64,000 nucleotides of DNA from Monocercomonoides exilis PA203 (GCA_001643675.2 LSRY02000033.1:682001-746000); one strand, 5' to 3'; shown: positions 9,262-42,500, counted from the stretch's first letter. Notes: generated from the letters alone by a model not told the origin. Numbers and translations are program-made.

Positions 9262-9298
<37 letters not shown>

Positions 9299-23451: not shown

Positions 23452-26400
23452 CCATAATTTCAACTCAACGTTTTTTGCGTTGTGATGATTCAAATAATGG
23501 TATTGAAGATTTTTCAACATTTAACGAAAATCATTTCAATATTCCCATTGTCTGTGAGAGTCGCATTTAATAGTCTCGCAGCTATCTTTTGTTTCGAAGA
23601 CAGTCTCAAAACTCAATGATTTCCATCCTGCACTTCTTTTTGTGCGCTCTTCCATTTGCATTCACCCAAAATGAAAACAGTTGTTGCGAAAAGGAAATCG
23701 GGAAATGTCTGAATAATCGCAACAACGACAATGCCATTCCATATGATGAACAAAACACTGTAAATTCTCATATTAATCCATTCAAAACTCTCGAAATATG
23801 TAATGTTGGTCGGTGCTTGTGGCTTGACACTCACATTCGAAACTCATCAATGATTCTGTGCAACTCCTCATTGGTGTTGAGCACACTCTCCATCTCTCTC
23901 CATTCGCATCCCTCATTCATCGAAATCGATGACAAATCACAATGCAAAATGGGGGGTGTGGTTCTCCTGCTTGAGCAGCCCAATTCATCACCCTTTGCAT
24001 CTTCTGGGTTTTTGCTGTTTTGCAACGCAACCCTTGCACATGCTGGGCTGGCACATGAATTGTCGAGCAGCCTTGTGTGTGCATCAGGGAACAGCCACAC
24101 CCGCTTCAAGGGTTGCTCTTTTCATGCTCTGTCCCACCCCCACCCTCACCCATTTCTTGTTTGTGGTGCTGCCTCTTCGCTCTCCCTCTCGCACTGTGTG
24201 TTTTCCAACATCACATCCCTTGCCCACACCTCCACCCAGCAACACCCAAACCCATGCTTCAGGAGCTGTGATGCTGCCAGTTGTGTGTGTGATGTGGCAA
24301 CAGACCCGCTTTCCTCCATTTTCCCACTCCATCTCACAAGCCACTCGTTTCGATCCTTCAACAGCTCATTCTCCAGGATCTCGAACAACAAGATCACAAA
24401 CAGAACTGTCATCGAGTCTTCGGATGAGGAGGAGATTGTGTTTGATGATGATGAGTTCGAGGTGAGCGAAACGGCAAATGATGGAGGTGCTATTTATGTT
24501 AACAATGCAAACAGCTTGATCATTGCAAGGTGTAAATTTTCTCATTGCTCTTGCAAAAATCATGGAGGCGCAATAGATGTGATAAATGTTCGAATGTGCA
24601 AAATATATGAAAGCATTATCACAAATTGCAGTGCGGGAGTTGATGCAGGTTCATTTCGTGTTTCTGGCTCGGATAATTTTTTTGCTGAAAACTGCATGTG
24701 CACAGAATGCCATTCAAATAATTATTATGGATGTGTCGGAGTATTCAGCATCAAAACAATTTTTATTTTCTCCAATAACACATTTTCTCATTCATATGCG
24801 TCAAACGATTGCGGTGGACTGTTGATAAGCAACTCTGAAGATGATAACATGATAGTTTCAAACTGTTTATTTTCTCATTTAACTGCTTCATGGTGTGGAA
24901 GTGCTTTTGTATTGCATCAAGGAACATCGAGATTTCCTCCACAAAGCAGGTTTCTGTTTTTCATGAACAACACATGCACAGATCAGTATTCGGGGGCAGA
25001 CTTCGGGTGTGGGGAGGGATGGGACGGGGTGGTGAACTCCACGCACTTTGAGCACTGCTACTCGCTCAGCACAGGCATCCGCAGCTTTGTGTGCACGGCC
25101 GGCTTCCGCCCCTGCACCGCCGGCTACGAGGCCGACTTCATCCGCGCCCCGACCTATTCCACCATCCATGTGGCCCAGCCTGCCCGCGCCTCGGGAGGCG
25201 ACACGCCCCACTGTGGCGAGCTCGGCAGCGAGTGCGCCACCATCGCCCACGCCCTCACCAGACTCGCCCCACCTGCCCCACCTGCCCCACCTGCCCCAGA
25301 TGCCTCAGATGCCCCGCAGCCAATCGCCGTCCTCCCCGGGTCGTACCAAGAGCCGGGCGTGGCAGTGGCCCAGACACACATCCGCATCAGCAGCAAAGAC
25401 CCAGCCAGCCCGGCCGAGGTGCGGTGCAACACCACCGGCGCAGTGCTGTTTGCCACAGCCAGCGGCGCGCTGGAGCTGGCGCAGCTGGTGCTGGTGGCCG
25501 ACTGGGGCGTGTGCCCAGCCACACCGCTGCTGGTGCTGGACGGGGACGAGGGCGCAGTGGCTGTGGCCGAGTGCACCATCACCGGCGCCGGCCACTCGGC
25601 TGCCAACCGGTTCCGCTCGCCGGTTGTTGTGCTGCACAGAGGGGCAGGGCGGATCACCAGATGCACCGTCACAGCGCTGGTGCTGGACAGCGCGAGTGCA
25701 ATCTGGGTCGGGAGGCGCTGCACTGCTGCTGTGGAGTGCACTGTGTGTGCACACATTGTGCGATCCTCGGGGTGCGGGGGAGCCATTGTCCTCGAGGAGG
25801 AGGAGGATGTGGAGGAGGATGGAGACAGCATTGCCAGTGCCAGTGCCAGTGCCAACACAAACGAAGGGGATGCTGCACAAGCGATATCTGGGTGTGTCTT
25901 TGAGGACTGCTGTGCAGAAGGGGATGGGAGTGGCGGCGGGGCAATATGTGCCAGGCTCCGAGGCAGAGGCTGCTTCACAGTGAACGCGTCAGCCAGCTCG
26001 GGGTGCACCCTGCCTCTTGTGCGCCATCACAGCCACAACAGCAACACCACCAGAGCCTCTCATGGCACAAATGGTGGTGATGATGGGAGTGGAGGCGAGG
26101 CACTGTTCAGCAGGTGCAAGAGCAGCGGATATGGCGGGGCGGTGTATCTGGACTTGGCCGAGGGCTTCGGCACACTCCTGCTGGACGGGGTTGTGTTTGG
26201 TGGCTGCGAGGCTGCGCTGGGAGGCGCCAATGTGTTTGTGAACGGGTGCGCCCTCACCCCGGCCAAGATCAGCACCTCCACCTTCTGCTTCCCCTTCGAC
26301 CAATCCTCTGCCGACGACCTCATGGGTGTCGATCGCGCGCTGCCAGAGGTTGCCCCGTTCACCCTCGCAGTGTTTCTTGTCCCGTTCCCAGGCGCTGCTC

Positions 26401-29400
26401 ATGTGGCTGGCCAGCCCTCCCGCGCATCCAACACCCCCTTCTGCGGCTTCTCCTTCTTCCCCTGCCTCACCATCCCCCATGCTGCCCGCACCCGCTTCCC
26501 CGCTGCTGACCCTGCCATCCTGCTCGATGAGGGCTTCCAGCTCTGCGAGAGGCTTGCTGCCGATGCACATGCTTGGAGCATCTCGTGTGTGCGCAAAGGG
26601 ATGGAGGTGCCTGTTGGTGCGCCTCCGGGCTTTTCGTCGCCCTCGCTCGTCGCAGTCAGCACCGAGGCAGCCATCGCAGACATCCGCTTTGCTGTGCCGG
26701 CCTCGCTCGGCTCAGCCACAGCCCTGGTCGAGGTGGCAGGGGCTGGCAGCCTGCGGATGGCCAGCTGCAGCGCTGTGCACAAGCACGACGGAGCCACAGC
26801 ACCTGGCGATGGCAGCGAGGAGCAGCTGACCTTCGCGCTGATCGCTGTTCGCTCGGGGAGGCTGGTGCTGAGCGAGTTCGAAACACTGGGCGAGGTGGCA
26901 AACACCATGTTTTCGCTGATGGAGTGCACAGGGAGCAGCAGCGTGGTGGAGTGCAGCGGGTGTGTGATTGGGGGCGGGGAGAAGGGGAGCGGAGACGGGG
27001 GGTGTGTGAAGATGGCTGGGGTCGGAGGAGGCAGTGCAAGGCTGGAGATGGAGAACTGCACAGTGGCGAGGTGCAGCGCCAGAGGCAGCGAGGCCAGAGG
27101 AGGCGGCGTTGCAGCCGAGCTGGCAGCCGGGGCAGTCCTGCTGATAAACGGCTCGACCTTCGAGGACTGCGCTGCCGCCGCTGCTGCTGCTGCGGCTGGC
27201 GGAGGCCAGGCACAGACCCGTGGCCTGGGCGGCGCGGTGTTCGTGGGGGAGGCAGATGCCGCCAGGCTGTTTGCCCTCGAGCACGTGGTGTTTGCCAGAT
27301 GCGATGCGTGGAAGGGCAGAAAGGTGTTTGTGTCCGCCACCGTGCTGTCCGCAGTGGCTGATGCCGCCCATTTCAACTGGGCCATGACCAGCGCCGACCT
27401 CAGCACCCTCGACGAGCTCGGCGGATTCGAGCTGGCCACAGCCGATCCCAGCCGCCCCATCCCGCTTGCCGTGTATTTCTGGACCAACATCACCACCCAC
27501 GTGTTTGTCGACGGAGACACAGGCTTCGACTTCAGTGCATGCGGGCACTCTGCTGCTCCCTGCCTGACCATCCCTCACGCCCTTTCCCTCAGGCTCACCC
27601 CGCTTCCCCTCCCCTCCTCCACCCTCTCCATCGCCTCCCACTCCTCCATCTCCGAGCCTCTCCTCCTCCTCCTCCCCCCTGCCCCCACCTCCCCCTCGCC
27701 CACCTCCCTCCCGTCTCTTCGCCTCCACGGCTGCACCCCAGACACCCCGGTCCACGTCTCCGATCCCACACCCAGCCAATCCGACGCCTTCCTCGCCTCT
27801 TCTGTCGACCTCGCCATCGACGCCATCTCCTTCCTCCTCCCTTCTGCTTTCCCCCACCACTCCTCCTTCATCCTGACATCTGCCCCAGACGCTGCTCTCC
27901 TTTTGCAGTGCTGCTCCTTCTCCATGCTCACCCCCCAAACACCCCTTGCCTATGTGATCGTGCTGGCAGCACAAGGGCGTGTCTCTCTCGACCACTGCAC
28001 CCTCGCCTCCGTGTCCTTGTCGCGCCCTTTCCTCGAAATAAATGATGCATCCACTTCTGCGACACTCACATCCCTCTCGGTCTCCTCCTCTTTGCTCGCT
28101 GGCACTCCCCTCGTGTCCATCTATCCACCTGCTCTGGCTGCTTCGACTGGCTTGGCTGGCTTGGCTGGCTTGGCTGCCCCAGACCCCAGGACAGCCATCG
28201 TTCTGGACTCTGCCAACATCACCAACATCGTGCGCACAGGCAACGGGCCGGCTCTGGTGTGTGCAGAGAGGGGATGTGCCATCGACTGTGCTGCCGAGGC
28301 GTGTGTGCTCACCAGCTGCGTGAGCGAAGAGTCTGCCGAGGGCGGAGCCGCAATGGTGTGCCTCGACTGCGACAAGTCGCAGCTGCGCGTGTCTGCCTGC
28401 ATCCTCACCCAGTGCATCTGCTCCCGCACAGCCGGCAGGGGCGGCGGCCTCTTCCTCGACTGCTCCCGCCCTGCTGGCGCTCCTCCCATCCCCCTCTCCA
28501 TCCTCAACCTCCGCTTCGCCCTCAACGACGCCTTCAGAGGAAAGGACCTCTTTCTCCGGTGCTCCTCCATCCCTGCCCAGATCAACGAGTCCCTCTTTTC
28601 CCTCGACTTCACCCAGCCCTCTCTCGCCACCAACACCTCCATCTGCGGCTCCGACTCCTCCCACACCGACCCCGACCTCGATGTCGACCTCGATGTCGAC
28701 CTCCTCCCCTTCATCACCTTCTACCGCGCCCACCAGATATTCGTCGACCAGGACACCGGCTCCTCTGCCCGCCAGTGCGGCTCCCTGCTTGCCCCCTGCG
28801 CCTCCCTCTCCACAGCCGTCCTCCACATCGCCCCTTCCATCGGCAACATCCTCTGGATCTGCTCCTCCTCCTCCTTCGACGCCCCGACCTCCCTTGCTGA
28901 CATCCGCGTCGAGTCTGTCTCTGCGAGTCTTGTCCCTGTGCACTTCGCCACCCCCATCCCCATTTCTTCTGATCTGTCTTCAGACCGCTCTGCTGTTGTC
29001 GCCTTTCTCAACACCTGCATCCTCACCCACTGCCACTTCTCCTTCCACTCCTCCTTCGCATCTGCCCACTCCTCCCTCTTCTCCCTCCTCGACGGATCCC
29101 TCGCTGTGTCCTCCTCCCTCTTTTCCGCAGCCGACCAGCCTGTCCGCCTCAACTCCACCCTCCTTTGTGCTTCCCGAGGCACCCTTCGCCTCTCCAACAT
29201 ATCTGTCCATTCCCTCCACCTCGCCTGCCCTGCTCTTCGTGCTCTCCCCGCTTCCTCCCTCTTCCTCTCCCACGCCAACCTCTCTGCCCTCAGTGCTGCC
29301 TCCCCTGTGCTCCTGCTCGACGATGGCTCCAGCTGCTCCATCGACCATCTCATCGCCACAGATCTTGCTGTCACAACGGGCAGTGTTGTTCTTCTCAATC

Positions 29401-32400
29401 CCCTGGCCAATCCCCCTTCTTCTTCTTCTTCTTTAGAATCAGATCAGCCAGAAGGCTCCTTCAGCATGATGCACTCCGTCTTCACTGCCATCTCGCTCAC
29501 CCAGCTCGGCTGCAGCGTGTGCCAGTGCAACCCCACCACAGCTCCAGTCTATCTCGCAAACTGCACCATCGCCCAGAGCGGCGCTCCCTCTGCCCTTGGG
29601 CGTGCAGCCCTGTTCTCCCATTGCCCTTCAGTCACACTCGAGGCCTGCTCAATAAATGGAGGCGCCCCCCAGCCGCCACAAGCCTTCACCAGCAACTCAC
29701 CAGACACCAGCAACAGCAGCAGCAGCAGCAGAGTGACCATTGAGCCAGATGCATCAGATGCACCTGGGGAACCAGAGAGTGTCTGCGAATGGAATGCCTC
29801 TCTCATCCACTGCCAGAGCACCGCAGCTGTCCTCAAAGACACAACCATCTCTGGCGCACAGCTGGGCGCACTCTCTGCAGCTGCCGGCAGCATCCGTGTC
29901 GACCGCTGCGAGTTCGCCAACAACAGCCCCGCCATCCCCAATTACCCCTCTGCCCGCCGCAACATCATCTGCTCCGATGCCTGCACCCTCACCATCCCCT
30001 CCCTCTGGCCTGGCGACCCCTTCCTCCCCGCCTCCTCCCTGTGGCTCCTCAACCGCGGATGCACCCTCCACGGCATCCCCGCTCACCACCCTTCCCCGCT
30101 CTTCGTCCCTGTGCTCCACAGCGTGCAAGCCAACCACACACCTGACGCCATGGCTCTCACGTTCAGCGGACTGCTCCTCGCTCCCTGCAATCTGTCCTTC
30201 GCTGTTGTGAAGAGCAACGGCGAAGAGAAGGAGATCGAGAAGCACAACTTCGATCCCGACGGGTTCCTGTCGGAAACAGAAGCCGAAGGGAGCGTGGCAA
30301 AGGACCTCGTCAGCAGCTGCGGAGATGAGATAGAGGTGAGTGTGTGCATTCTGTTTGGGGATGCAGATCGCCCTTCTTCGACCGATTCCTTCATCCTGAA
30401 GAACAGAAGCGTGCCCAAGGCAAATGGAGACGAAAGGGTTGTTGAGGGAGGAAAAGAAGAGAAATCTTATTGGCTGTTGGTTGTGATTGTGCTTGTTGTG
30501 ATGTTCTTGATTGTTTTCATTGGATTTATTTTGTTTGTAATTCGATGGAGAAAGCAAAAGAGAAGAACAGAAGAGTTGGAAGTGATTGTGGAAGACACAG
30601 TGAGGAAGGATCCGAAGGCGTTTGAGATGGTGACGATGGAGATGTCTCCCGAGGAGCAGTGGAGGAGAGCAGAGAGGGAGGCAGAGAAGAAGAATGAAGA
30701 GAGGATCAAGAAGAGGGTGTATGCGAAAAGCTTGGGTCATTCAGAGTCATCTGAGCATTTGTTGAGCGAGAGTGGCTCCACTGAATATATATTGGGGAAA
30801 GACTCAGACAAGATCCCCGAATGGGTGCTGGAGAAGGTTGATGATGAAGAAGAGGTGAGAAAGAGATCTCCTTCACCATCCATCTCATCCACTTCAACCA
30901 CAGACACATCAGACACAGAATCCACGTTTGTTCGGGGGGAGGATCTGTGCCCCACCACATCGTCCATGTCGAATCTGGTGGATGCCATGGCCTGCTCCTC
31001 GCCTCACGAGAAGCTGATTGTGGATCTGAGGGATTCGATGTTCATGCTGCTGCATGGGAGGAACAAGACAAAGGAGATGGCGATCGGCACTCTCCAGGAG
31101 CGGCAGATGACAGCTGCCCAGATCCTGTTCTGGGTGGCCAACCTCGCCCTCCACTCCTTCGACGAAATGGAAAATCCTCTTTCTTCTCTTGCCAACCTCA
31201 GCCCCCACATCGTGCTGTTCTCCGAGCACATGGTCATCTGCATTGCTCTCCACTCCGATTGCTCTTCTTCAGATTCTGATTCATCCTCCATCTCTTCGTC
31301 AACTGTTGTCACATCAACAAGTGATGATGATAGAGACTCTCTGCCCTCGTCTGCCTTTGAAGACGAGGACGATTACAAGAAAGAGTGTCTGAGGTGGAAG
31401 GCGCCGGAGCTGCTGAGCGGCGCAAAGAGCCACGCGACAAAGAAGACTGTGGTGTTCTCCATCGGGATGATGGTGTGGGAGTGCCTCACGCTCCAGATCC
31501 CGTTCGCAGAGTACGAGGCCGAAGCAGCCGGCCGCAAGATCTCAAACGGAGAGAGGCCAGCCCCCTGCACCTCCCACGACATCCCCCTCGCCCACACTGC
31601 CTGCGCCGCAACCTCCCAGCAGCCCCACGCCAGGCCCACCCTCCTCGACCTCAAGAAGGCCTTCATCGCCCTCTTTCCGCCTGCCTCTGCCATGATCACC
31701 GCCTCCGACGCAATCGACCTCCTCGACCCCGCTGCCGTCCCTCCTCCCTCTGCTTTGCCGGCCTCTGCTGTCTCCCAGGCACTCACCTCGTTCTGACTGG
31801 CTCCCTCCTGCATCCCTTGATGAAAGAGGGAAAAAAGAAAAAAACAAAAATAAAGGAGGGGAATGGAAAGAAATGAGGAAAGAAGCATCTGAAACAGTTG
31901 TTTTTATTATTATTTATCTTTTTTGTGGCATCCTCAGCGATGCGAGTTTTTCGTGTTTGTGTTGCGTTCCCAGGCCAGCAGCATCGCCACTTCGCTTCTG
32001 CGCACCTCCCTCCAGACAACGTGTGATCTCACAATCACCCTGTCTTTTCCGCGTTTATTTTTGTGTTTTTGTGTTTTTGTGTTTTTGTTTTGCTGGCCAA
32101 CCTTTTTCGTTTTCGACGGGGTGCAGATGCGCAGATTCTGCCAAAATATTTATGAAAATTATTTTTTTCCCTCCTCAGTTCGTGGAAATCAACAAACATG
32201 CAGAAATCTTTTTGTTTTGTTTTTTCTTTTCCCTGGTGTCTTGGCAGGAGTTTCGATCCATTTCAAGGCTGCTGTGTGAGAAAGGCAAATAGCATTCATA
32301 ACTGCATGTGTGCATGCGTGCATATGCAAAGACACAAAGGAATGGAGCTGGCTCACAAATCCTGTTTCAAAGAACAATGTGCTTCCGGCTCCAACAAACA

Positions 32401-32839
32401 CATCGCACTCGATGGCGGGAGTTCTCACCACGCAAGCATCCTTTCGCTTTTTCCACCCCGAGCCCTTCGCCTGCTCCGACAGCAACAGAACCAGGAACAC
32501 AGCTGACATTTATCTGTTCTGGTCTGTGCGCCAGCTCGGCAATCAGATGCTTCGGGGATTGTGCTCGCACCTTCCTCGTTTTGTGCTTGTTGAACGCGAG
32601 GTCAACCGATTTTGATTCAATGATAACAGCAACGCTGCAGCGATGCAAAAGCCAATTAATCATCATCACAATGAAAAATGATAATTTGTTCTGAAGACAC
32701 ACACATGCACATGCACACATTTCGGTGGGGATAAAAGAGCTTCATCAGAATATTTTCTCTTTCATTTTCTTGCACTTAGAATGCTTTCATTTGCTCATTT
32801 CCAACAAAAGCAGTGGGATTGTCTTTCTTATCCTGTTTT
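23452..32839 (+). repeat. Left arm of a ~9.4-kb inverted duplication
   Basis: Reverse complement of 33596-42977; the ORF track is mirrored. The outer edge is approximate. Confidence 0.95.
23616..31796 (+). CDS. Giant type-I surface protein (~2726 aa): signal peptide, Cys-rich GGA(I/V) beta-helix (Pmp-like) ectodomain, single TM helix, degenerate TKL-type pseudokinase; copy A
   Basis: Signal MISILHFFLCALPFAFT; repeats DGGAIYV, HGGAIDV, GGGAIC, YGGAVYL, LGGAVFV, RGGGLFL; CG...PC.TI motifs; TM YWLLVVIVLVVMFLIVFIGFILFVI then RWRKQKRR; kinase C-lobe LRWKAPELL, VFSIGMMVWECLTLQIPF, RPTL, with no HRD or DFG. Confidence 0.88.
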   Translation: MISILHFFLCALPFAFTQNENSCCEKEIGKCLNNRNNDNAIPYDEQNTVNSHINPFKTLEICNVGRCLWLDTHIRNSSMILCNSSLVLSTLSISLHSHPSFIEIDDKSQCKMGGVVLLLEQPNSSPFASSGFLLFCNATLAHAGLAHELSSSLVCASGNSHTRFKGCSFHALSHPHPHPFLVCGAASSLSLSHCVFSNITSLAHTSTQQHPNPCFRSCDAASCVCDVATDPLSSIFPLHLTSHSFRSFNSSFSRISNNKITNRTVIESSDEEEIVFDDDEFEVSETANDGGAIYVNNANSLIIARCKFSHCSCKNHGGAIDVINVRMCKIYESIITNCSAGVDAGSFRVSGSDNFFAENCMCTECHSNNYYGCVGVFSIKTIFIFSNNTFSHSYASNDCGGLLISNSEDDNMIVSNCLFSHLTASWCGSAFVLHQGTSRFPPQSRFLFFMNNTCTDQYSGADFGCGEGWDGVVNSTHFEHCYSLSTGIRSFVCTAGFRPCTAGYEADFIRAPTYSTIHVAQPARASGGDTPHCGELGSECATIAHALTRLAPPAPPAPPAPDASDAPQPIAVLPGSYQEPGVAVAQTHIRISSKDPASPAEVRCNTTGAVLFATASGALELAQLVLVADWGVCPATPLLVLDGDEGAVAVAECTITGAGHSAANRFRSPVVVLHRGAGRITRCTVTALVLDSASAIWVGRRCTAAVECTVCAHIVRSSGCGGAIVLEEEEDVEEDGDSIASASASANTNEGDAAQAISGCVFEDCCAEGDGSGGGAICARLRGRGCFTVNASASSGCTLPLVRHHSHNSNTTRASHGTNGGDDGSGGEALFSRCKSSGYGGAVYLDLAEGFGTLLLDGVVFGGCEAALGGANVFVNGCALTPAKISTSTFCFPFDQSSADDLMGVDRALPEVAPFTLAVFLVPFPGAAHVAGQPSRASNTPFCGFSFFPCLTIPHAARTRFPAADPAILLDEGFQLCERLAADAHAWSISCVRKGMEVPVGAPPGFSSPSLVAVSTEAAIADIRFAVPASLGSATALVEVAGAGSLRMASCSAVHKHDGATAPGDGSEEQLTFALIAVRSGRLVLSEFETLGEVANTMFSLMECTGSSSVVECSGCVIGGGEKGSGDGGCVKMAGVGGGSARLEMENCTVARCSARGSEARGGGVAAELAAGAVLLINGSTFEDCAAAAAAAAAGGGQAQTRGLGGAVFVGEADAARLFALEHVVFARCDAWKGRKVFVSATVLSAVADAAHFNWAMTSADLSTLDELGGFELATADPSRPIPLAVYFWTNITTHVFVDGDTGFDFSACGHSAAPCLTIPHALSLRLTPLPLPSSTLSIASHSSISEPLLLLLPPAPTSPSPTSLPSLRLHGCTPDTPVHVSDPTPSQSDAFLASSVDLAIDAISFLLPSAFPHHSSFILTSAPDAALLLQCCSFSMLTPQTPLAYVIVLAAQGRVSLDHCTLASVSLSRPFLEINDASTSATLTSLSVSSSLLAGTPLVSIYPPALAASTGLAGLAGLAAPDPRTAIVLDSANITNIVRTGNGPALVCAERGCAIDCAAEACVLTSCVSEESAEGGAAMVCLDCDKSQLRVSACILTQCICSRTAGRGGGLFLDCSRPAGAPPIPLSILNLRFALNDAFRGKDLFLRCSSIPAQINESLFSLDFTQPSLATNTSICGSDSSHTDPDLDVDLDVDLLPFITFYRAHQIFVDQDTGSSARQCGSLLAPCASLSTAVLHIAPSIGNILWICSSSSFDAPTSLADIRVESVSASLVPVHFATPIPISSDLSSDRSAVVAFLNTCILTHCHFSFHSSFASAHSSLFSLLDGSLAVSSSLFSAADQPVRLNSTLLCASRGTLRLSNISVHSLHLACPALRALPASSLFLSHANLSALSAASPVLLLDDGSSCSIDHLIATDLAVTTGSVVLLNPLANPPSSSSSLESDQPEGSFSMMHSVFTAISLTQLGCSVCQCNPTTAPVYLANCTIAQSGAPSALGRAALFSHCPSVTLEACSINGGAPQPPQAFTSNSPDTSNSSSSSRVTIEPDASDAPGEPESVCEWNASLIHCQSTAAVLKDTTISGAQLGALSAAAGSIRVDRCEFANNSPAIPNYPSARRNIICSDACTLTIPSLWPGDPFLPASSLWLLNRGCTLHGIPAHHPSPLFVPVLHSVQANHTPDAMALTFSGLLLAPCNLSFAVVKSNGEEKEIEKHNFDPDGFLSETEAEGSVAKDLVSSCGDEIEVSVCILFGDADRPSSTDSFILKNRSVPKANGDERVVEGGKEEKSYWLLVVIVLVVMFLIVFIGFILFVIRWRKQKRRTEELEVIVEDTVRKDPKAFEMVTMEMSPEEQWRRAEREAEKKNEERIKKRVYAKSLGHSESSEHLLSESGSTEYILGKDSDKIPEWVLEKVDDEEEVRKRSPSPSISSTSTTDTSDTESTFVRGEDLCPTTSSMSNLVDAMACSSPHEKLIVDLRDSMFMLLHGRNKTKEMAIGTLQERQMTAAQILFWVANLALHSFDEMENPLSSLANLSPHIVLFSEHMVICIALHSDCSSSDSDSSSISSSTVVTSTSDDDRDSLPSSAFEDEDDYKKECLRWKAPELLSGAKSHATKKTVVFSIGMMVWECLTLQIPFAEYEAEAAGRKISNGERPAPCTSHDIPLAHTACAATSQQPHARPTLLDLKKAFIALFPPASAMITASDAIDLLDPAAVPPPSALPASAVSQALTSF

Positions 32840-33595
32840 TTCAGCAGAAGAGAACGTGCAATGTGGCAAATCCTAAAAAAAAATATAAAACAGGAATTCA
32901 TGAAGAAAAAACGCAAACAAAATATGAAAAGCGATTTATTGTCCTCTTTCATTTAATTTTTTTGGATAAAAGATCTTGAGATTTTGGATGCTGAATATCA
33001 GGAACGCTTTCCCAGTGAGAAGGCATTGCAACTTCTTTCATGTTGCACTTGAAACAATTTTTGGTCTGACTGTTCTTTTCAAGGAGCTTCTGGAGGAACA
33101 GTGTGCGGTCGACTCTTCCAAAGCACCTGAAAAGGCTCTGATAATCTTTTAAAACTGTATTTCAGAAAATGAGGTTGATCAACTTGAAAAAAACGTAATT
33201 AATAAAGAAGATTTTTAAAATTATTTTTTACAGAAGCTTCATCAAACAAAAGCTTGCACAAAATTCAGACAGATCTGAAAAGAATGGTAGCATTAAGCAA
33301 AGGGATTTTACATAAAAGAACTGACATGACACATTGCATTCTTGGAAATCTTTTTCGTCATTTGTTGTTTGAATTCTTTTTGAAAGGATTTTTTAATCAT
33401 GACAAAAAAGAAAATGATTTTAGTTAAAAACTTATTTTTTTCAAGAAAACATAGAGCAAACTTTGTTCTAAACACAAAGAAATTATCATTCTGAATTTGT
33501 ATGTCTCATGTTTCAATATATTTAATTCTTTTCACCTCTTTTTTATTCTCTTATTTAATAAAACAAAAATTCCTCTTCATTTTCCAGTTTCCAAC

Positions 33596-36500
33596 AAAAC
33601 AGGATAAGAAAGACAATCCCACTGCTTTTGTTGGAAATGAGCAAATGAAAGCATTCTAAGTGCAAGAAAATGAAAGAGAAAATATTCTGATGAAGCTCTT
33701 TTATCCCCACCGAAATGTGTGCATGTGCATGTGTGTGTCTTCAGAACAAATTATCATTTTTCATTGTGATGATGATTAATTGGCTTTTGCATCGCTGCAG
33801 CGTTGCTGTTATCATTGAATCAAAATCGGTTGACCTCGCGTTCAACAAGCACAAAACGAGGAAGGTGCGAGCACAATCCCCGAAGCATCTGATTGCCGAG
33901 CTGGCGCACAGACCAGAACAGATAAATGTCAGCTGTGTTCCTGGTTCTGTTGCTGTCGGAGCAGGCGAAGGGCTCGGGGTGGAAAAAGCGAAAGGATGCT
34001 TGCGTGGTGAGAACTCCCGCCATCGAGTGCGATGTGTTTGTTGGAGCCGGAAGCACATTGTTCTTTGAAACAGGATTTGTGAGCCAGCTCCATTCCTTTG
34101 TGTCTTTGCATATGCACGCATGCACACATGCAGTTATGAATGCTATTTGCCTTTCTCACACAGCAGCCTTGAAATGGATCGAAACTCCTGCCAAGACACC
34201 AGGGAAAAAGAAAAAACAAAACAAAAAGATTTCTGCATGTTTGTTGATTTCCACGAACTGAGGAGGGAAAAAAATAATTTTCATAAATATTTTGGCAGAA
34301 TCTGCGCATCTGCACCCCGTCGAAAACGAAAAAGGTTGGCCAGCAAAACAAAAACACAAAAACACAAAAACACAAAAATAAACGCGGAAAAGACAGGGTG
34401 ATTGTGAGATCACACGTTGTCTGGAGGGAGGTGCGCAGAAGCGAAGTGGCGATGCTGCTGGCCTGGGAACGCAACACAAACACGAAAAACTCGCATCGCT
34501 GAGGATGCCACAAAAAAGATAAATAATAATAAAAACAACTGTTTCAGATGCTTCTTTCCTCATTTCTTTCCATTCCCCTCCTTTATTTTTGTTTTTTTCT
34601 TTTTTCCCTCTTTCATCAAGGGATGCAGGAGGGAGCCAGTCAGAACGAGGTGAGTGCCTGGGAGACAGCAGAGGCCGGCAAAGCAGAGGGAGGAGGGACG
34701 GCAGCGGGGTCGAGGAGGTCGATTGCGTCGGAGGCGGTGATCATGGCAGAGGCAGGCGGAAAGAGGGCGATGAAGGCCTTCTTGAGGTCGAGGAGGGTGG
34801 GCCTGGCGTGGGGCTGCTGGGAGGTTGCGGCGCAGGCAGTGTGGGCGAGGGGGATGTCGTGGGAGGTGCAGGGGGCTGGCCTCTCTCCGTTTGAGATCTT
34901 GCGGCCGGCTGCTTCGGCCTCGTACTCTGCGAACGGGATCTGGAGCGTGAGGCACTCCCACACCATCATCCCGATGGAGAACACCACAGTCTTCTTTGTC
35001 GCGTGGCTCTTTGCGCCGCTCAGCAGCTCCGGCGCCTTCCACCTCAGACACTCTTTCTTGTAATCGTCCTCGTCTTCAAAGGCAGACGAGGGCAGAGAGT
35101 CTCTATCATCATCACTTGTTGATGTGACAACAGTTGACGAAGAGATGGAGGATGAATCAGAATCTGAAGAAGAGCAATCGGAGTGGAGAGCAATGCAGAT
35201 GACCATGTGCTCGGAGAACAGCACGATGTGGGGGCTGAGGTTGGCAAGAGAAGAAAGAGGATTTTCCATTTCGTCGAAGGAGTGGAGGGCGAGGTTGGCC
35301 ACCCAGAACAGGATCTGGGCAGCTGTCATCTGCCGCTCCTGGAGAGTGCCGATCGCCATCTCCTTTGTCTTGTTCCTCCCATGCAGCAGCATGAACATCG
35401 AATCCCTCAGATCCACAATCAGCTTCTCGTGAGGCGAGGAGCAGGCCATGGCATCCACCAGATTCGACATGGACGATGTGGTGGGGCACAGATCCTCCCC
35501 CCGAACAAACGTGGATTCTGTGTCTGATGTGTCTGTGGTTGAAGTGGATGAGATGGATGGTGAAGGAGATCTCTTTCTCACCTCTTCTTCATCATCAACC
35601 TTCTCCAGCACCCATTCGGGGATCTTGTCTGAGTCTTTCCCCAATATATATTCAGTGGAGCCACTCTCGCTCAACAAATGCTCAGATGACTCTGAATGAC
35701 CCAAGCTTTTCGCATACACCCTCTTCTTGATCCTCTCTTCATTCTTCTTCTCTGCCTCCCTCTCTGCTCTCCTCCACTGCTCCTCGGGAGACATCTCCAT
35801 CGTCACCATCTCAAACGCCTTCGGATCCTTCCTCACTGTGTCTTCCACAATCACTTCCAACTCTTCTGTTCTTCTCTTTTGCTTTCTCCATCGAATTACA
35901 AACAAAATAAATCCAATGAAAACAATCAAGAACATCACAACAAGCACAATCACAACCAACAGCCAATAAGATTTCTCTTCTTTTCCTCCCTCAACAACCC
36001 TTTCGTCTCCATTTGCCTTGGGCACGCTTCTGTTCTTCAGGATGAAGGAATCGGTCGAAGAAGGGCGATCTGCATCCCCAAACAGAATGCACACACTCAC
36101 CTCTATCTCATCTCCGCAGCTGCTGACGAGGTCCTTTGCCACGCTCCCTTCGGCTTCTGTTTCCGACAGGAACCCGTCGGGATCGAAGTTGTGCTTCTCG
36201 ATCTCCTTCTCTTCGCCGTTGCTCTTCACAACAGCGAAGGACAGATTGCAGGGAGCGAGGAGCAGTCCGCTGAACGTGAGAGCCATGGCGTCAGGTGTGT
36301 GGTTGGCTTGCACGCTGTGGAGCACAGGGACGAAGAGCGGGGAAGGGTGGTGAGCGGGGATGCCGTGGAGGGTGCATCCGCGGTTGAGGAGCCACAGGGA
36401 GGAGGCGGGGAGGAAGGGGTCGCCAGGCCAGAGGGAGGGGATGGTGAGGGTGCAGGCATCGGAGCAGATGATGTTGCGGCGGGCAGAGGGGTAATTGGGG

Positions 36501-39500
36501 ATGGCGGGGCTGTTGTTGGCGAACTCGCAGCGGTCGACACGGATGCTGCCGGCAGCTGCAGAGAGTGCGCCCAGCTGTGCGCCAGAGATGGTTGTGTCTT
36601 TGAGGACAGCTGTGGTGCTCTGGCAGTGGATGAGAGAGGCATTCCATTCGCAGACACTCTCTGGTTCCCCGGGTGCATCTGGCTCAATGGTCACTCTGCT
36701 GCTGCTGCTGCTGTTGCTGGTGTCTGGTGAGTTGCTGGTGAAGGCTTGTGGCGGCTGGGGGGCGCCTCCATTTATTGAGCAGGCCTCGAGTGTGACTGAA
36801 GGGCAATGGGAGAACAGGGCTGCACGCCCAAGGGCAGAGGGAGCGCCGCTCTGGGCGATGGTGCAGTTTGCGAGATAGACTGGAGCTGTGGTGGGGTTGC
36901 ACTGGCACACGCTGCAGCCGAGCTGGGTGAGCGAGATGGCAGTGAAGACGGAGTGCATCATGCTGAAGGAGCCTTCTGGCTGATCTGATTCTAAAGAAGA
37001 AGAAGAAGAAGGGGGATTGGCCAGGGGATTGAGAAGAACAACACTGCCCGTTGTGACAGCAAGATCTGTGGCGATGAGATGGTCGATGGAGCAGCTGGAG
37101 CCATCGTCGAGCAGGAGCACAGGGGAGGCAGCACTGAGGGCAGAGAGGTTGGCGTGGGAGAGGAAGAGGGAGGAAGCGGGGAGAGCACGAAGAGCAGGGC
37201 AGGCGAGGTGGAGGGAATGGACAGATATGTTGGAGAGGCGAAGGGTGCCTCGGGAAGCACAAAGGAGGGTGGAGTTGAGGCGGACAGGCTGGTCGGCTGC
37301 GGAAAAGAGGGAGGAGGACACAGCGAGGGATCCGTCGAGGAGGGAGAAGAGGGAGGAGTGGGCAGATGCGAAGGAGGAGTGGAAGGAGAAGTGGCAGTGG
37401 GTGAGGATGCAGGTGTTGAGAAAGGCGACAACAGCAGAGCGGTCTGAAGACAGATCAGAAGAAATGGGGATGGGGGTGGCGAAGTGCACAGGGACAAGAC
37501 TCGCAGAGACAGACTCGACGCGGATGTCAGCAAGGGAGGTCGGGGCGTCGAAGGAGGAGGAGGAGCAGATCCAGAGGATGTTGCCGATGGAAGGGGCGAT
37601 GTGGAGGACGGCTGTGGAGAGGGAGGCGCAGGGGGCAAGCAGGGAGCCGCACTGGCGGGCAGAGGAGCCGGTGTCCTGGTCGACGAATATCTGGTGGGCG
37701 CGGTAGAAGGTGATGAAGGGGAGGAGGTCGACATCGAGGTCGACATCGAGGTCGGGGTCGGTGTGGGAGGAGTCGGAGCCGCAGATGGAGGTGTTGGTGG
37801 CGAGAGAGGGCTGGGTGAAGTCGAGGGAAAAGAGGGACTCGTTGATCTGGGCAGGGATGGAGGAGCACCGGAGAAAGAGGTCCTTTCCTCTGAAGGCGTC
37901 GTTGAGGGCGAAGCGGAGGTTGAGGATGGAGAGGGGGATGGGAGGAGCGCCAGCAGGGCGGGAGCAGTCGAGGAAGAGGCCGCCGCCCCTGCCGGCTGTG
38001 CGGGAGCAGATGCACTGGGTGAGGATGCAGGCAGACACGCGCAGCTGCGACTTGTCGCAGTCGAGGCACACCATTGCGGCTCCGCCCTCGGCAGACTCTT
38101 CGCTCACGCAGCTGGTGAGCACACACGCCTCGGCAGCACAGTCGATGGCACATCCCCTCTCTGCACACACCAGAGCCGGCCCGTTGCCTGTGCGCACGAT
38201 GTTGGTGATGTTGGCAGAGTCCAGAACGATGGCTGTCCTGGGGTCTGGGGCAGCCAAGCCAGCCAAGCCAGCCAAGCCAGTCGAAGCAGCCAGAGCAGGT
38301 GGATAGATGGACACGAGGGGAGTGCCAGCGAGCAAAGAGGAGGAGACCGAGAGGGATGTGAGTGTCGCAGAAGTGGATGCATCATTTATTTCGAGGAAAG
38401 GGCGCGACAAGGACACGGAGGCGAGGGTGCAGTGGTCGAGAGAGACACGCCCTTGTGCTGCCAGCACGATCACATAGGCAAGGGGTGTTTGGGGGGTGAG
38501 CATGGAGAAGGAGCAGCACTGCAAAAGGAGAGCAGCGTCTGGGGCAGATGTCAGGATGAAGGAGGAGTGGTGGGGGAAAGCAGAAGGGAGGAGGAAGGAG
38601 ATGGCGTCGATGGCGAGGTCGACAGAAGAGGCGAGGAAGGCGTCGGATTGGCTGGGTGTGGGATCGGAGACGTGGACCGGGGTGTCTGGGGTGCAGCCGT
38701 GGAGGCGAAGAGACGGGAGGGAGGTGGGCGAGGGGGAGGTGGGGGCAGGGGGAGGAGGAGGAGGAGAGGCTCGGAGATGGAGGAGTGGGAGGCGATGGAG
38801 AGGGTGGAGGAGGGAGGGGAAGCGGGGTGAGCCTGAGGGAAAGGGCGTGAGGGATGGTCAGGCAGGGAGCAGCAGAGTGCCCGCATGCACTGAAGTCGAA
38901 GCCTGTGTCTCCGTCGACAAACACGTGGGTGGTGATGTTGGTCCAGAAATACACGGCAAGCGGGATGGGGCGGCTGGGATCGGCTGTGGCCAGCTCGAAT
39001 CCGCCGAGCTCGTCGAGGGTGCTGAGGTCGGCGCTGGTCATGGCCCAGTTGAAATGGGCGGCATCAGCCACTGCGGACAGCACGGTGGCGGACACAAACA
39101 CCTTTCTGCCCTTCCACGCATCGCATCTGGCAAACACCACGTGCTCGAGGGCAAACAGCCTGGCGGCATCTGCCTCCCCCACGAACACCGCGCCGCCCAG
39201 GCCACGGGTCTGTGCCTGGCCTCCGCCAGCCGCAGCAGCAGCAGCGGCGGCAGCGCAGTCCTCGAAGGTCGAGCCGTTTATCAGCAGGACTGCCCCGGCT
39301 GCCAGCTCGGCTGCAACGCCGCCTCCTCTGGCCTCGCTGCCTCTGGCGCTGCACCTCGCCACTGTGCAGTTCTCCATCTCCAGCCTTGCACTGCCTCCTC
39401 CGACCCCAGCCATCTTCACACACCCCCCGTCTCCGCTCCCCTTCTCCCCGCCCCCAATCACACACCCGCTGCACTCCACCACGCTGCTGCTCCCTGTGCA

Positions 39501-42500
39501 CTCCATCAGCGAAAACATGGTGTTTGCCACCTCGCCCAGTGTTTCGAACTCGCTCAGCACCAGCCTCCCCGAGCGAACAGCGATCAGCGCGAAGGTCAGC
39601 TGCTCCTCGCTGCCATCGCCAGGTGCTGTGGCTCCGTCGTGCTTGTGCACAGCGCTGCAGCTGGCCATCCGCAGGCTGCCAGCCCCTGCCACCTCGACCA
39701 GGGCTGTGGCTGAGCCGAGCGAGGCCGGCACAGCAAAGCGGATGTCTGCGATGGCTGCCTCGGTGCTGACTGCGACGAGCGAGGGCGACGAAAAGCCCGG
39801 AGGCGCACCAACAGGCACCTCCATCCCTTTGCGCACACACGAGATGCTCCAAGCATGTGCATCGGCAGCAAGCCTCTCGCAGAGCTGGAAGCCCTCATCG
39901 AGCAGGATGGCAGGGTCAGCAGCGGGGAAGCGGGTGCGGGCAGCATGGGGGATGGTGAGGCAGGGGAAGAAGGAGAAGCCGCAGAAGGGGGTGTTGGATG
40001 CGCGGGAGGGCTGGCCAGCCACATGAGCAGCGCCTGGGAACGGGACAAGAAACACTGCGAGGGTGAACGGGGCAACCTCTGGCAGCGCGCGATCGACACC
40101 CATGAGGTCGTCGGCAGAGGATTGGTCGAAGGGGAAGCAGAAGGTGGAGGTGCTGATCTTGGCCGGGGTGAGGGCGCACCCGTTCACAAACACATTGGCG
40201 CCTCCCAGCGCAGCCTCGCAGCCACCAAACACAACCCCGTCCAGCAGGAGTGTGCCGAAGCCCTCGGCCAAGTCCAGATACACCGCCCCGCCATATCCGC
40301 TGCTCTTGCACCTGCTGAACAGTGCCTCGCCTCCACTCCCATCATCACCACCATTTGTGCCATGAGAGGCTCTGGTGGTGTTGCTGTTGTGGCTGTGATG
40401 GCGCACAAGAGGCAGGGTGCACCCCGAGCTGGCTGACGCGTTCACTGTGAAGCAGCCTCTGCCTCGGAGCCTGGCACATATTGCCCCGCCGCCACTCCCA
40501 TCCCCTTCTGCACAGCAGTCCTCAAAGACACACCCAGATATCGCTTGTGCAGCATCCCCTTCGTTTGTGTTGGCACTGGCACTGGCACTGGCAATGCTGT
40601 CTCCATCCTCCTCCACATCCTCCTCCTCCTCGAGGACAATGGCTCCCCCGCACCCCGAGGATCGCACAATGTGTGCACACACAGTGCACTCCACAGCAGC
40701 AGTGCAGCGCCTCCCGACCCAGATTGCACTCGCGCTGTCCAGCACCAGCGCTGTGACGGTGCATCTGGTGATCCGCCCTGCCCCTCTGTGCAGCACAACA
40801 ACCGGCGAGCGGAACCGGTTGGCAGCCGAGTGGCCGGCGCCGGTGATGGTGCACTCGGCCACAGCCACTGCGCCCTCGTCCCCGTCCAGCACCAGCAGCG
40901 GTGTGGCTGGGCACACGCCCCAGTCGGCCACCAGCACCAGCTGCGCCAGCTCCAGCGCGCCGCTGGCTGTGGCAAACAGCACTGCGCCGGTGGTGTTGCA
41001 CCGCACCTCGGCCGGGCTGGCTGGGTCTTTGCTGCTGATGCGGATGTGTGTCTGGGCCACTGCCACGCCCGGCTCTTGGTACGACCCGGGGAGGACGGCG
41101 ATTGGCTGCGGGGCATCTGAGGCATCTGGGGCAGGTGGGGCAGGTGGGGCAGGTGGGGCGAGTCTGGTGAGGGCGTGGGCGATGGTGGCGCACTCGCTGC
41201 CGAGCTCGCCACAGTGGGGCGTGTCGCCTCCCGAGGCGCGGGCAGGCTGGGCCACATGGATGGTGGAATAGGTCGGGGCGCGGATGAAGTCGGCCTCGTA
41301 GCCGGCGGTGCAGGGGCGGAAGCCGGCCGTGCACACAAAGCTGCGGATGCCTGTGCTGAGCGAGTAGCAGTGCTCAAAGTGCGTGGAGTTCACCACCCCG
41401 TCCCATCCCTCCCCACACCCGAAGTCTGCCCCCGAATACTGATCTGTGCATGTGTTGTTCATGAAAAACAGAAACCTGCTTTGTGGAGGAAATCTCGATG
41501 TTCCTTGATGCAATACAAAAGCACTTCCACAATATGATGCTGTTAAGTTGTTGAACAAACAACTTGTGATGATAGTGCTGTTATTATTTATGTTACTTAG
41601 AAGGATTCCACCAGTATCGTATGTTGCATATGAATGAGAAAATGTGTTATTGGAGAAAATAAAAATTGTTTTGATGCTGAATACTCCGACACATCCATAA
41701 TAATTATTTGAATGGCATTCTGTGCACATGCAGTTTTCAGCAAAAAAATTATCCGAGCCAGAAACACGAAATGAACCTGCATCAACTCCCGCACTGCAAT
41801 TTGTGATAATGCTTTCATATATTTTGCACATTCGAACATTTATCACATCTATTGCGCCTCCATGATTTTTGCAAGAGCAATGAGAAAATTTACACCTTGC
41901 AATGATCAAGCTGTTTGCATTGTTAACATAAATAGCACCTCCATCATTTGCCGTTTCGCTCACCTCGAACTCATCATCATCAAACACAATCTCCTCCTCA
42001 TCCGAAGACTCGATGACAGTTCTGTTTGTGATCTTGTTGTTCGAGATCCTGGAGAATGAGCTGTTGAAGGATCGAAACGAGTGGCTTGTGAGATGGAGTG
42101 GGAAAATGGAGGAAAGCGGGTCTGTTGCCACATCACACACACAACTGGCAGCATCACAGCTCCTGAAGCATGGGTTTGGGTGTTGCTGGGTGGAGGTGTG
42201 GGCAAGGGATGTGATGTTGGAAAACACACAGTGCGAGAGGGAGAGCGAAGAGGCAGCACCACAAACAAGAAATGGGTGAGGGTGGGGGTGGGACAGAGCA
42301 TGAAAAGAGCAACCCTTGAAGCGGGTGTGGCTGTTCCCTGATGCACACACAAGGCTGCTCGACAATTCATGTGCCAGCCCAGCATGTTCGAGGGTTGTGT
42401 TGCAAAACAACAAAAACCCAGATGATGCAAAGGGTGGTGAATTGGGCTGCTCAAGCAGGAGGACCACACTCCCCATTTCACATTGCGATTTGCCATCGAT

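What the first reader, a model, noticed from the sequence alone, without database searches (positions are those of the whole stretch)
24800..24893. Precise one-repeat cassette swap between twin surface receptors: candidate modular diversification system
Copy A 24800-24893 and copy B 41532-41625 are the same length (94 bp) but differ at 40 positions by my count, while hundreds of bp on each side appear identical. The peptides are SNDCGGLLISNSEDDNMIVSNCLFSHLTASW and TYDTGGILLSNINNNSTIITSCLFNNLTASY (14/31 identical). The structural GG, hydrophobic and CLF..LTAS positions are kept, and several differences are synonymous. This looks like replacement of about one beta-helix repeat by an old paralogous module rather than point mutation. 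It is analogous to cassette gene conversion in antigenic variation or VLR assembly, here in a protist receptor-pseudokinase ectodomain. Whether it is programmed or a one-off ectopic conversion cannot be told from this window.
Basis: partly seen in the sequence, partly recalled or inferred. Interest (0 to 1): 0.85.

Follow-up and report, generated by a model that had tools for sequence, protein, structure and literature searches.

The report
One-rung mosaic patch between twin receptors
Two almost identical giant surface-receptor genes of the mitochondrion-less gut protist Monocercomonoides exilis really differ by one swapped 94-base beta-helix repeat, but this is best explained by ordinary short-tract gene conversion in a hypervariable zone of a huge, concertedly evolving gene family, not by a programmed cassette system.

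Summary
Window 24800-24893 and 41532-41625 (opposite strand) differ at 40 of 94 bases, with 762 and 2,717 identical bases on either side. They lie in the two arms of a 9.4-kb palindrome holding two tail-to-tail giant receptor/pseudokinase-like genes (A, B) of Monocercomonoides exilis.

The patch is one rung of a right-handed beta-helix. Its synonymous divergence is saturated (pS 0.81, against 0-0.1 in the flanks), so it is an old homologous module, not point mutation. Both forms occur in 2016 DNA and 2024 RNA contigs, and the organism is reported monoploid, so it is neither an assembly artefact nor an allele.

The B form is 84/84 identical to a third linked paralog, C. The A form has no other copy in the 82-Mb assembly. 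The patch sits in a 400-bp AT-rich hypervariable zone, inside a GC-rich gene body that is 98-100% homogenised among four linked paralogs. Four other close paralog pairs differ in the same zone. A similar 80-bp transmembrane patch in C is 99% identical to genes on another contig.

Best reading: non-programmed, short-tract ectopic gene conversion or a relic module; direction unresolved, with B converted from C favoured. I found no silent-cassette archive and no sign of switching. First readers of this scan noted similar palindromes elsewhere in this genome.

The parts
24800..24893 (+). A-form patch, one beta-helix rung of gene A. It has no N-glycosylation sequon and net charge -4. Bases 24800-24883 are unique in the genome.
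41532..41625 (-). B-form patch of gene B. Its first 84 bases are identical to paralog C (G000:C29:677661-677752). It has three N-X-S/T sequons. Its last 10 bases carry 3 B-only changes.
23616..31796 (+). Gene A: intronless ORF of 2,726 aa. It encodes an N-terminal beta-helix head, a long GC-rich stalk, a TM helix and a kinase-like C-lobe.
34640..42809 (-). Gene B, the twin of A. As assembled, its frame is broken after about 1,475-1,485 codons by two 1-bp deletions in C-runs. These may be homopolymer errors of the nanopore assembly.
23471..32839 (+). Left arm of the palindrome.
33596..42954 (-). Right arm of the palindrome.
32840..33595 (.). 756-bp spacer. Its first 306 bp continue the homology of A with paralog C, so the A side keeps the original downstream sequence.
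24549..24947 (+). Hypervariable zone, AT-rich with GC3 about 0.30. Among paralogs A-D it holds deep divergence (pS 0.5-0.8). Sharing changes by sub-block: [AB|C|D], [ABC|D], [A|BC|D], [ACD|B], [ABC|D].
24378..25154 (+). Right-handed parallel beta-helix head domain, model residues about 16-273 of A aa 240-560.
23479..24037 (+). Outer-edge zone where the arms differ by 21 scattered SNPs (3.7%). It includes a 5-SNP stretch found in A alone at 23932-23955.
30462..30541 (+). TM-helix segment. Paralog C carries a different version here, which is 99% identical to two genes on contig C6.
31368..31658 (+). Kinase-like C-lobe: Pfam PK_Tyr_Ser-Thr profile positions 161-256 only.

Best explanation
The patch is a product of ordinary, non-programmed, non-allelic gene conversion in a large family of giant beta-helix receptor/pseudokinase-like genes. 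This is the 'protein tyrosine kinase / TKL' family, the largest gene family of Monocercomonoides exilis.

Four linked paralogs (A, B, C, D on one contig) have had their GC-rich bodies homogenised to 98-100% identity. A and B are also kept nearly identical as the arms of a palindrome. A 400-bp AT-rich stretch of the beta-helix head has escaped homogenisation and keeps old, gene-specific modules.

Within that zone, one rung (about 84-94 bp) differs between A and B. The favoured history is that A keeps the older module of the A/B lineage and that B's rung was overwritten by a short conversion tract from a C-like paralog 46 kb away. The alternative is that A received the module from a paralog that is now lost or unassembled.

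Shown here: the patch, its age, the sharing of the B form with C, the mosaicism of the family, and the recurrent hypervariable zone. Inferred: the conversion mechanism, its direction, and the link between homogenisation and high GC.
For: The patch is real. All sampled words of the A form plus both junctions occur in 4 DNA runs (2016) and 4 RNA runs (2024, another study). An RNA contig covers 24770-24923 with no differences, and the B/C form appears as a replaced segment (24809->24879) in all four laid runs.

The module is old. In codons 24798-24884, A against B/C gives pS 0.81 and pN 0.32; A against D gives pS 0.72; B/C against D gives pS 0.5. The flanks give pS 0-0.1. The ts:tv ratio is 20:20.

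A partner exists for the B form. B equals C at 84/84 bases and in the left flank 24703-24799. A, B and C are identical over 24894-25522.

Sites where A and B differ are skewed towards A being the odd one. A alone differs at 35 sites, B alone at 7, and B equals C with D different at 21. These include two further small stretches found in A alone (23932-23955 and 29746-29823).

The family is mosaic. C's TM segment is 98-100% identical to two genes on contig C6, whose surrounding 1.2 kb is only 79% identical. Segments of A match genes on contigs C48, C91 and C21 at 91-94%.

The hypervariable zone recurs. In four other close paralog pairs of distant subfamilies, the residue-difference clusters fall in the zone homologous to A aa 299-443. 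The zone's modules in the contig-C5 pair have no close copy elsewhere; the best matches are 70-79%.

GC3 is 0.30 in the zone against 0.6-0.87 in the homogenised stalk. The coding average is 41% GC (PMC6759080).

The organism is reported monoploid and the culture clonal (PMC6759080), so the two forms are not alleles.
Against: No donor for the A form exists in the assembly, so conversion into A cannot be shown. The relic scenario cannot be proved without an outgroup strain.

The last 10 bases of the patch carry 3 B-only changes that present-day C does not have. A simple C-to-B transfer therefore needs a second event or a slightly different donor.

The arms are otherwise identical. Ongoing arm-to-arm conversion should erase a 94-bp difference unless the event is recent, selection keeps it, or the heterology blocks heteroduplex formation. 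None of these was tested.

The link between GC3 and homogenisation is only a correlation.
Confidence: 0.8

Rival explanations
1. A programmed or at least high-frequency diversification system. In this reading, palindromic receptor pairs use segmental gene conversion to shuffle head rungs, as in VSG mosaics, Giardia VSPs, vlsE or VLR assembly.
For: The patch is in register with one repeat and keeps its length. The hypervariable zone recurs at the same place in five paralog pairs. Many convergent inverted pairs of family genes are visible in the hit lists. Other first readers flagged similar loci (unchecked).
Against: No silent archive and no donor for the A form were found. The related sequences I checked by open frame are mostly long open genes. 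The same two forms appear in 2016 DNA and 2024 RNA contigs, with no third form at this rung except paralog D's. The hypervariable modules of another pair are unique and old. pN/pS is about 0.4, which gives no sign of positive selection. The low GC3 of the zone argues for rare, not frequent, conversion there.
Confidence: 0.08
2. An assembly or polishing artefact. The assembly used Canu with Nanopolish and ten rounds of Pilon, which could have misplaced paralog reads. Alternatively, the two forms are alleles collapsed into the two arms.
For: The assembly was polished with short reads, and this contig was corrected by hand (PMC8767320). The arms are near-identical repeats. Copy B carries indels in C homopolymer runs.
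Against: The A form with both junctions is present in independent Illumina RNA contigs from 2024 and in the 2016 DNA runs. No other gene in the assembly could supply A-form reads. The patch lies only 1.3 kb inside the arm's unique outer boundary, well within the reported read N50 of 8.9 kb (PMC8767320). The organism is reported monoploid, with 0.04 SNPs per kb (PMC6759080).
Confidence: 0.04
3. Local hypermutation or rapid point-mutation divergence of one rung under diversifying selection after the duplication.
For: The differences concentrate in the loop between strands. They change charge and glycosylation sequons.
Against: Synonymous sites are saturated while the flanks have none, and ts:tv is 1:1. 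pN/pS is below 1. B equals C exactly. The changes are not adenine-specific, so they are not DGR-like. The A form carries the family-consensus motif of that rung, matching distant subfamilies at 22/24 bases.
Confidence: 0.03

Closest known systems
Giardia VSP gene pairs and segmental gene conversion (G. muris: PMC7641422)
   Same: Both are metamonad surface-protein families. Both have identical gene pairs, mostly tail-to-tail. [quoted passage not shown]
   Different: Giardia has arrays of silent pseudogene VSPs and mutually exclusive expression. Here I found no silent archive. The proteins are giant beta-helix receptors with a kinase-like tail, and both forms are present in RNA libraries.
Mosaic VSG formation by segmental gene conversion in Trypanosoma brucei (PMC13233330, abstract only)
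   Same: In both, short segments of diverged paralogs end up in an otherwise unchanged gene and create new surface variants.
   Different: In the VSG system, an expression site draws on a large silent repertoire during infection. No expression site, no archive and no switching were detected here.
Arm-to-arm gene conversion in large palindromes, such as the human Y and X ampliconic palindromes
   Same: Both have inverted arms above 99.9% identity around a short spacer, with divergence confined to the outer boundary. In both, high GC is consistent with GC-biased conversion.
   Different: The arms here are only 9.4 kb. The cargo is a surface-receptor gene. One 94-bp island of 43% divergence persists inside the arms.
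Chlamydial Pmp-type and autotransporter-like beta-helix surface proteins
   Same: The head has ~30-aa repeats with a GG-A-I/L/V motif followed by a hydrophobic strand and an F-x-x-N/C motif. The model fits right-handed beta-helices, including the autotransporter passenger Vag8 and the adhesin PfbA.
   Different: The Pfam Chlam_PMP match is below threshold, at E 0.38. This is a eukaryotic single-pass membrane protein with a cytoplasmic kinase-like domain.
The M. exilis 'protein tyrosine kinase / TKL' family (PMC6759080, PMC8767320)
   Same: The genes studied here belong to it. The papers report 332 genes, the largest family in the genome, overlapping 'unclassified repeats'.
   Different: My term searches in the two papers found no mention of gene conversion. 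I saw nothing there on palindromic pairing, the head hypervariable zone or the GC mosaic either, though I did not search for those terms.

Membership tests
Non-allelic (ectopic) gene-conversion mosaic in a multigene family | A sharply bounded tract of high divergence sits between identical flanks in two paralogs. | tested here: met
   40/94 differences, with 762 and 2,717 identical bases on either side.
Non-allelic (ectopic) gene-conversion mosaic in a multigene family | The tract sequence is shared with another paralog, the donor or partner. | tested here: inconclusive
   The B form equals paralog C at 84/84 bases. The A form has no partner at DNA or protein level.
Non-allelic (ectopic) gene-conversion mosaic in a multigene family | Synonymous divergence in the tract is far above that of the flanks. 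| tested here: met
   pS 0.81 in the tract against 0-0.1 in the flanks.
Non-allelic (ectopic) gene-conversion mosaic in a multigene family | Other members show independent mosaic tracts with identifiable partners. | tested here: met
   C's TM segment is 99% identical to two genes on contig C6, whose flanks are 79% identical. Segments of 91-94% identity are shared with genes on C48, C91 and C21.
Programmed cassette conversion (antigenic-variation type: VSG, vlsE, pilE, MSG) | An archive of silent, partial or promoterless donor cassettes exists. | tested here: not met
   No second copy of the A form was found. Related sequences are mostly long open genes of 2,000-4,700 aa, with some shorter open frames and one condensed copy on C21 that lacks the head.
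Programmed cassette conversion (antigenic-variation type: VSG, vlsE, pilE, MSG) | Variants switch often within clonal populations. | tested here: inconclusive
   The same two forms are in 2016 DNA and 2024 RNA contigs. Contigs drop rare variants, so low-frequency switching is not excluded.
Programmed cassette conversion (antigenic-variation type: VSG, vlsE, pilE, MSG) | Expression comes from a single site or is mutually exclusive. | not testable with these tools
   Both forms are present in RNA-library contigs. Neither transcription nor exclusivity can be judged from contigs.
Palindrome maintained by arm-to-arm conversion | Inverted arms are near-identical around a short spacer, and divergence rises at the outer boundary. 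| tested here: met
   The arms are 9.37 kb and 99.2% identical overall, with a 756-bp spacer. The outer 560 bp are 3.7% diverged and the inner 8.8 kb almost identical.
Right-handed parallel beta-helix fold | The structure superposes on solved beta-helices over most of the domain. | tested here: met
   The AF2 model has pLDDT 82 and pTM 0.78. VIA-align gives Z 19-20.6, 211-241 aligned residues and rmsd mostly 2.5-3.9 A. Foldseek alone found no match at E<=0.001.
Chlamydia PMP repeat (PF02415) | The Pfam gathering score is reached. | tested here: not met
   E 0.38, 11.6 bits against a cut-off of 20.6.
Active protein kinase | A full kinase domain with N-lobe, HRD and DFG motifs is present. | tested here: inconclusive
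   Only profile positions 161-256 of 258 match. By eye I see no HRD or DFG motif in the translation. This is pseudokinase-like, but no formal test was done.
Diversity-generating retroelement | Differences are confined to adenines of a template repeat. | tested here: not met
   Substitutions are of all kinds, with 7 and 17 of the 40 at A in either copy.

The most novel reading that the evidence does not exclude
The tail-to-tail palindromes of M. exilis giant receptor genes could form a genuine repertoire-diversification architecture. Arm-to-arm and inter-locus conversion would keep a constant body, while single beta-helix rungs of the head are exchanged often enough to matter within populations. 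That would be a surface-receptor variation system in a non-pathogenic, mitochondrion-less gut commensal.
Probability: 0.1. Interest if true: 0.75.

Novelty: new member of a known kind. Interest (0 to 1): 0.42.

Why it matters
The largest gene family of M. exilis has so far been listed only as 'tyrosine kinases' overlapping unclassified repeats.

This locus shows what these genes are. They encode giant single-pass receptors with a beta-helix head and a degenerate kinase tail. They sit in palindromes and linked clusters. Their bodies are homogenised and strikingly GC-rich, while a short head zone keeps old, gene-specific modules that are occasionally exchanged one rung at a time.

That gives a concrete, testable model for how a free-swimming gut commensal builds and maintains a large receptor repertoire. 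It also offers a natural system in a monoploid protist for studying concerted evolution, GC-biased conversion and escape from homogenisation. It does not reveal a new mechanism.

Tried and rejected
**Donor for the A form.**
- A DNA search of the whole assembly with the 94-mer found only itself.
- A protein search with 43 aa found only A-D, then matches of at most 40% identity.
- A short-word BLAST against about 280 kb of fetched family loci found only a 24-base conserved motif.

**Neighbouring A/B-type block 24551-24702.** It has no other copy.

**More palindromic pairs.** The recurrence test therefore rests on the loci already in hand.

**Fold and family searches.**
- Foldseek against PDB gave no match at E<=0.001. 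VIA-align was needed to confirm the fold.
- Pfam on the whole protein and on the head found no ectodomain family above threshold.
- ORFs downstream of the stop codon gave no Pfam hit.

**Readings rejected.**
- DGR-like mutagenesis.
- An allelic explanation, because the organism is reported monoploid (PMC6759080).

**Not pursued or uninformative.**
- Several apparent 'patches' unique to paralog C (A coordinates 25799-25840, 28116-28155, 28663-28684) are only microsatellite-type indels.
- The search for homologous proteins returned only one distant M. exilis protein. It identified the organism but gave no relatives in other species.
- Read depth from contigs could not be used to estimate copy ratios.

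Full report
**1. The observation**

The two stretches are reverse complements of each other. They lie in a large palindrome with arms at 23471-32839 and 33596-42954 and a 756-bp spacer.

A base-by-base alignment of the arms gives four classes of difference:
- 21 scattered SNPs at the outer edge (23479-24037).
- The 94-bp patch, with 40 ungapped differences.
- Two 1-bp indels (27611, 27674), a 9-bp indel (29746-29754) with two nearby SNPs, and one 1-bp indel (32227).
- Nothing else.

The patch is flanked by 762 and 2,717 identical bases. A 170-fold local excess of differences cannot be chance.

**2. What the locus is**

Each arm carries one intronless ORF. Gene A runs 23616-31796 and encodes 2,726 aa. 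It has a transmembrane helix and a C-terminal match to the C-lobe only of the protein-kinase profile. By eye I see no HRD or DFG motif, so 'pseudokinase-like' is reasonable but was not formally tested.

The window is G000:C29:682001-746000 of an 82.3-Mb, 101-contig genome. The only database relative carries a MONOS_ tag of Monocercomonoides exilis. The assembly statistics match the ONT assembly of strain PA203, made with Canu, Nanopolish and ten rounds of Pilon (PMC8767320).

'Protein tyrosine kinases' are reported as the largest gene family: 332 genes, of which 320 are TKL (PMC6759080). They overlap 'unclassified repeats' (PMC8767320). My term searches in those two papers found no mention of gene conversion. 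A search of the genome with 233 aa of the head found at least 136 members, most with open frames of 2,000-4,700 aa.

**3. Is it an artefact or an allele?**

Evidence against an artefact:
- All sampled 31-mers of the A form with both junctions occur in four DNA runs of 2016 (possibly the source sample) and in four RNA-seq runs of 2024 from a different study.
- Laid on the locus, an RNA contig covers 24770-24923 without a difference. The B/C form shows up in all four runs as a record that matches both sides and replaces 24809-24879.
- Paralog D's version appears as a replacement of 24550-24939. No further form was seen.
- The patch lies 1.3 kb from the unique outer boundary of the arm, well inside the reported read N50 of 8.9 kb (PMC8767320).

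Evidence against alleles: M. exilis is reported monoploid and the culture clonal, with 0.04 SNPs per kb (PMC6759080).

I therefore take the twin difference as real. The RNA contigs are consistent with transcription of both forms but do not prove it.

**4. Age and nature of the patch**

In codons 24798-24884:
- A against B or C gives pS 0.81 and pN 0.32.
- A against D gives pS 0.72.
- B/C against D gives pS 0.5.
- The flanks have pS 0-0.1.

Transitions equal transversions (20:20), and the changes are not adenine-specific. So this is a deeply diverged homologous module, not recent mutation, hypermutation or DGR-type editing. With pN/pS near 0.4 there is no codon-level sign of positive selection, although saturation limits that test.

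An alignment of 24 family heads shows ~30-aa repeats: a GG-A-I/L/V motif, a hydrophobic strand and a C-x-F motif. The patch is exactly one such unit. An AlphaFold model of A residues 240-560 (pLDDT 82, pTM 0.78) superposes on right-handed parallel beta-helices at Z 19-20.6 over 211-241 residues. Foldseek alone gave nothing significant, and Pfam Chlam_PMP stays below threshold.

The patch is model residues 157-187, which is one rung. The B form has three N-X-S/T sequons and net charge -1. The A form has no sequon and net charge -4. A functional difference is plausible but inferred.

**5. Paralogs and polarity**

Two further paralogs lie on the same contig:
- C is at 669786-678640 (minus strand), 96% identical over 8.9 kb.
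- D is near 550900-559200, 95% identical.

In the patch, B equals C at 84/84 bases and A is alone. In the last 10 bases, B is alone and A equals C and D.

The A form has no other copy in the assembly at DNA level or protein level. Its central motif does match the consensus of distant subfamilies at 22/24 bases.

Across all sites where A and B differ, A alone differs at 35 sites, B alone at 7, and B equals C with D different at 21. Two other small stretches are found in A alone (23932-23955 and 29746-29823).

A and B share a 5' head (23471-23911) that C and D lack. C and D share a different one. The homology between A and C runs 306 bp into the spacer, so A keeps the original downstream context.

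The most economical history is this: the A/B lineage had its own head modules, A still holds them, and B has received short C-type tracts. The alternative is import into A from a lost or unassembled paralog, and I cannot exclude it. The three B-only changes at the 3' end of the patch need an extra event in either history.

**6. The wider pattern**

Among A-D, identity is 98-100% over about 7 kb of GC-rich body but falls to 68-82% in 24562-24961. In that zone the sharing pattern changes block by block:

| Block | Pattern |
|---|---|
| 24549-24704 | [AB\|C\|D] |
| 24705-24797 | [ABC\|D] |
| 24798-24884 | [A\|BC\|D] |
| 24885-24896 | [ACD\|B] |
| 24897-24947 | [ABC\|D] |

This is the signature of short conversion tracts inside an island of old divergence.

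GC3 is 0.30 in the island and 0.6-0.87 in the body, against a coding average of 41% GC (PMC6759080). That fits GC-biased conversion acting where homogenisation is frequent, but it is only a correlation.

A second true substitution patch exists in C's transmembrane segment (A coordinates 30462-30541). It is 98-100% identical to two genes on contig C6, whose surrounding 1.2 kb is only about 79% identical. This is direct evidence for inter-contig exchange of ~80-bp modules in this family. Other segments of A match genes on C48, C91 and C21 at 91-94%.

Four other close paralog pairs from distant subfamilies (on C5, C22, C10 and C1) have their residue-difference clusters in the zone homologous to A aa 299-443. 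The zone is therefore hypervariable across the family. In the C5 pair, neither version of the variable module has a close copy elsewhere; the best matches are 70% and 79%. This favours 'gene-specific relic modules in homogenised genes' over 'frequent draws from a shared cassette pool'.

The hit lists also show many convergent (plus then minus) pairs of family genes on single contigs. Unchecked notes of other first readers describe similar palindromes with identical bodies and different heads elsewhere in this genome. I did not verify those loci.

**7. Verdict**

The step to a programmed cassette system is not supported, for four reasons:
- No archive or donor for the A form was found.
- The forms are stable across eight years of data, at contig resolution.
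- Other hypervariable modules are old and unique to each gene.
- The low GC3 suggests conversion is rare in the zone.

The closest known cases are Giardia VSP pairs with segmental conversion (PMC7641422), VSG mosaics (PMC13233330, abstract only), and palindromes maintained by arm-to-arm conversion (my own knowledge). This is a new, well-documented member of a known kind. Its moderate interest comes mainly from what it reveals about the organisation of the largest gene family of M. exilis.

**8. Limits**

- Only contigs of public runs, not raw reads, could be laid, so rare variants and true copy ratios are unknown.
- The direction of the event is inferred by parsimony only.

Noticed in passing
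window 23471-42954: A 19.5-kb palindrome carries two tail-to-tail giant receptor genes. Divergence is confined to the outer 560 bp and the 94-bp patch. The first 306 bp of the spacer continue the homology with paralog C.
   Followed up: yes
window 23616-31796: There is a sharp GC3 mosaic inside one intronless ORF: 0.30 in the hypervariable head zone, 0.6-0.87 in the stalk, and about 0.6 around the TM helix. The GC-rich parts are the ones homogenised among paralogs A-D. An earlier scan note reports the same mosaic for paralog C.
   Followed up: partly
window 38752 and 38814 (copy B; A equivalents 27674 and 27611): Two 1-bp deletions in C homopolymer runs break the frame of copy B after about 1,475-1,485 codons. 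They may be nanopore homopolymer errors or a real pseudogene.
   Followed up: partly
L006:75-170 (G000:C29:672075-672170) against G000:C6:402176-402270 and C6:261895-261989: Paralog C's transmembrane-helix segment is 99% identical to two inverted genes 140 kb apart on another contig. The surrounding sequence is only about 79% identical. This is a clean case of short-module exchange between contigs.
   Followed up: yes
G000 contigs C46, C36, C7, C75, C27, C58, C8 (hit lists): At least ten pairs of family genes lie on one contig as plus-then-minus (convergent) pairs a few kb apart. This suggests that tail-to-tail palindromes are a common arrangement of this family.
   Followed up: no
window 31921-32703: Sequence downstream of the receptor stop codon, inside the arms, has 70-72% matches at six places on contigs C16 and C54. 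The ORFs there have no Pfam match, and the nature of this element is unknown.
   Followed up: partly
G000:C21:1001046-1002867: A condensed copy of the stalk: six collinear pieces representing 3.5 kb of gene A lie within 1.8 kb, at 69-91% identity. It is either a short-stalk family member or a decayed copy, and it lacks the head zone.
   Followed up: no
window 49434-49835: A 195-nt inverted repeat, 95% complementary with a 12-nt loop, lies in an AT-rich stretch. It is a hairpin-like element of unknown nature.
   Followed up: no
window 8590-10084: A long run of trinucleotide-rich sequence (CTT/CAT/CTC on the plus strand) would encode an acidic Glu/Asp-rich low-complexity protein on the minus strand.
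   Followed up: no
L020/L032/L021 (contigs C5 and C15): This other subfamily repeats the architecture. A third gene (L021) is about 60% identical upstream of the hypervariable zone and 93-99% identical downstream of it.
   Followed up: partly
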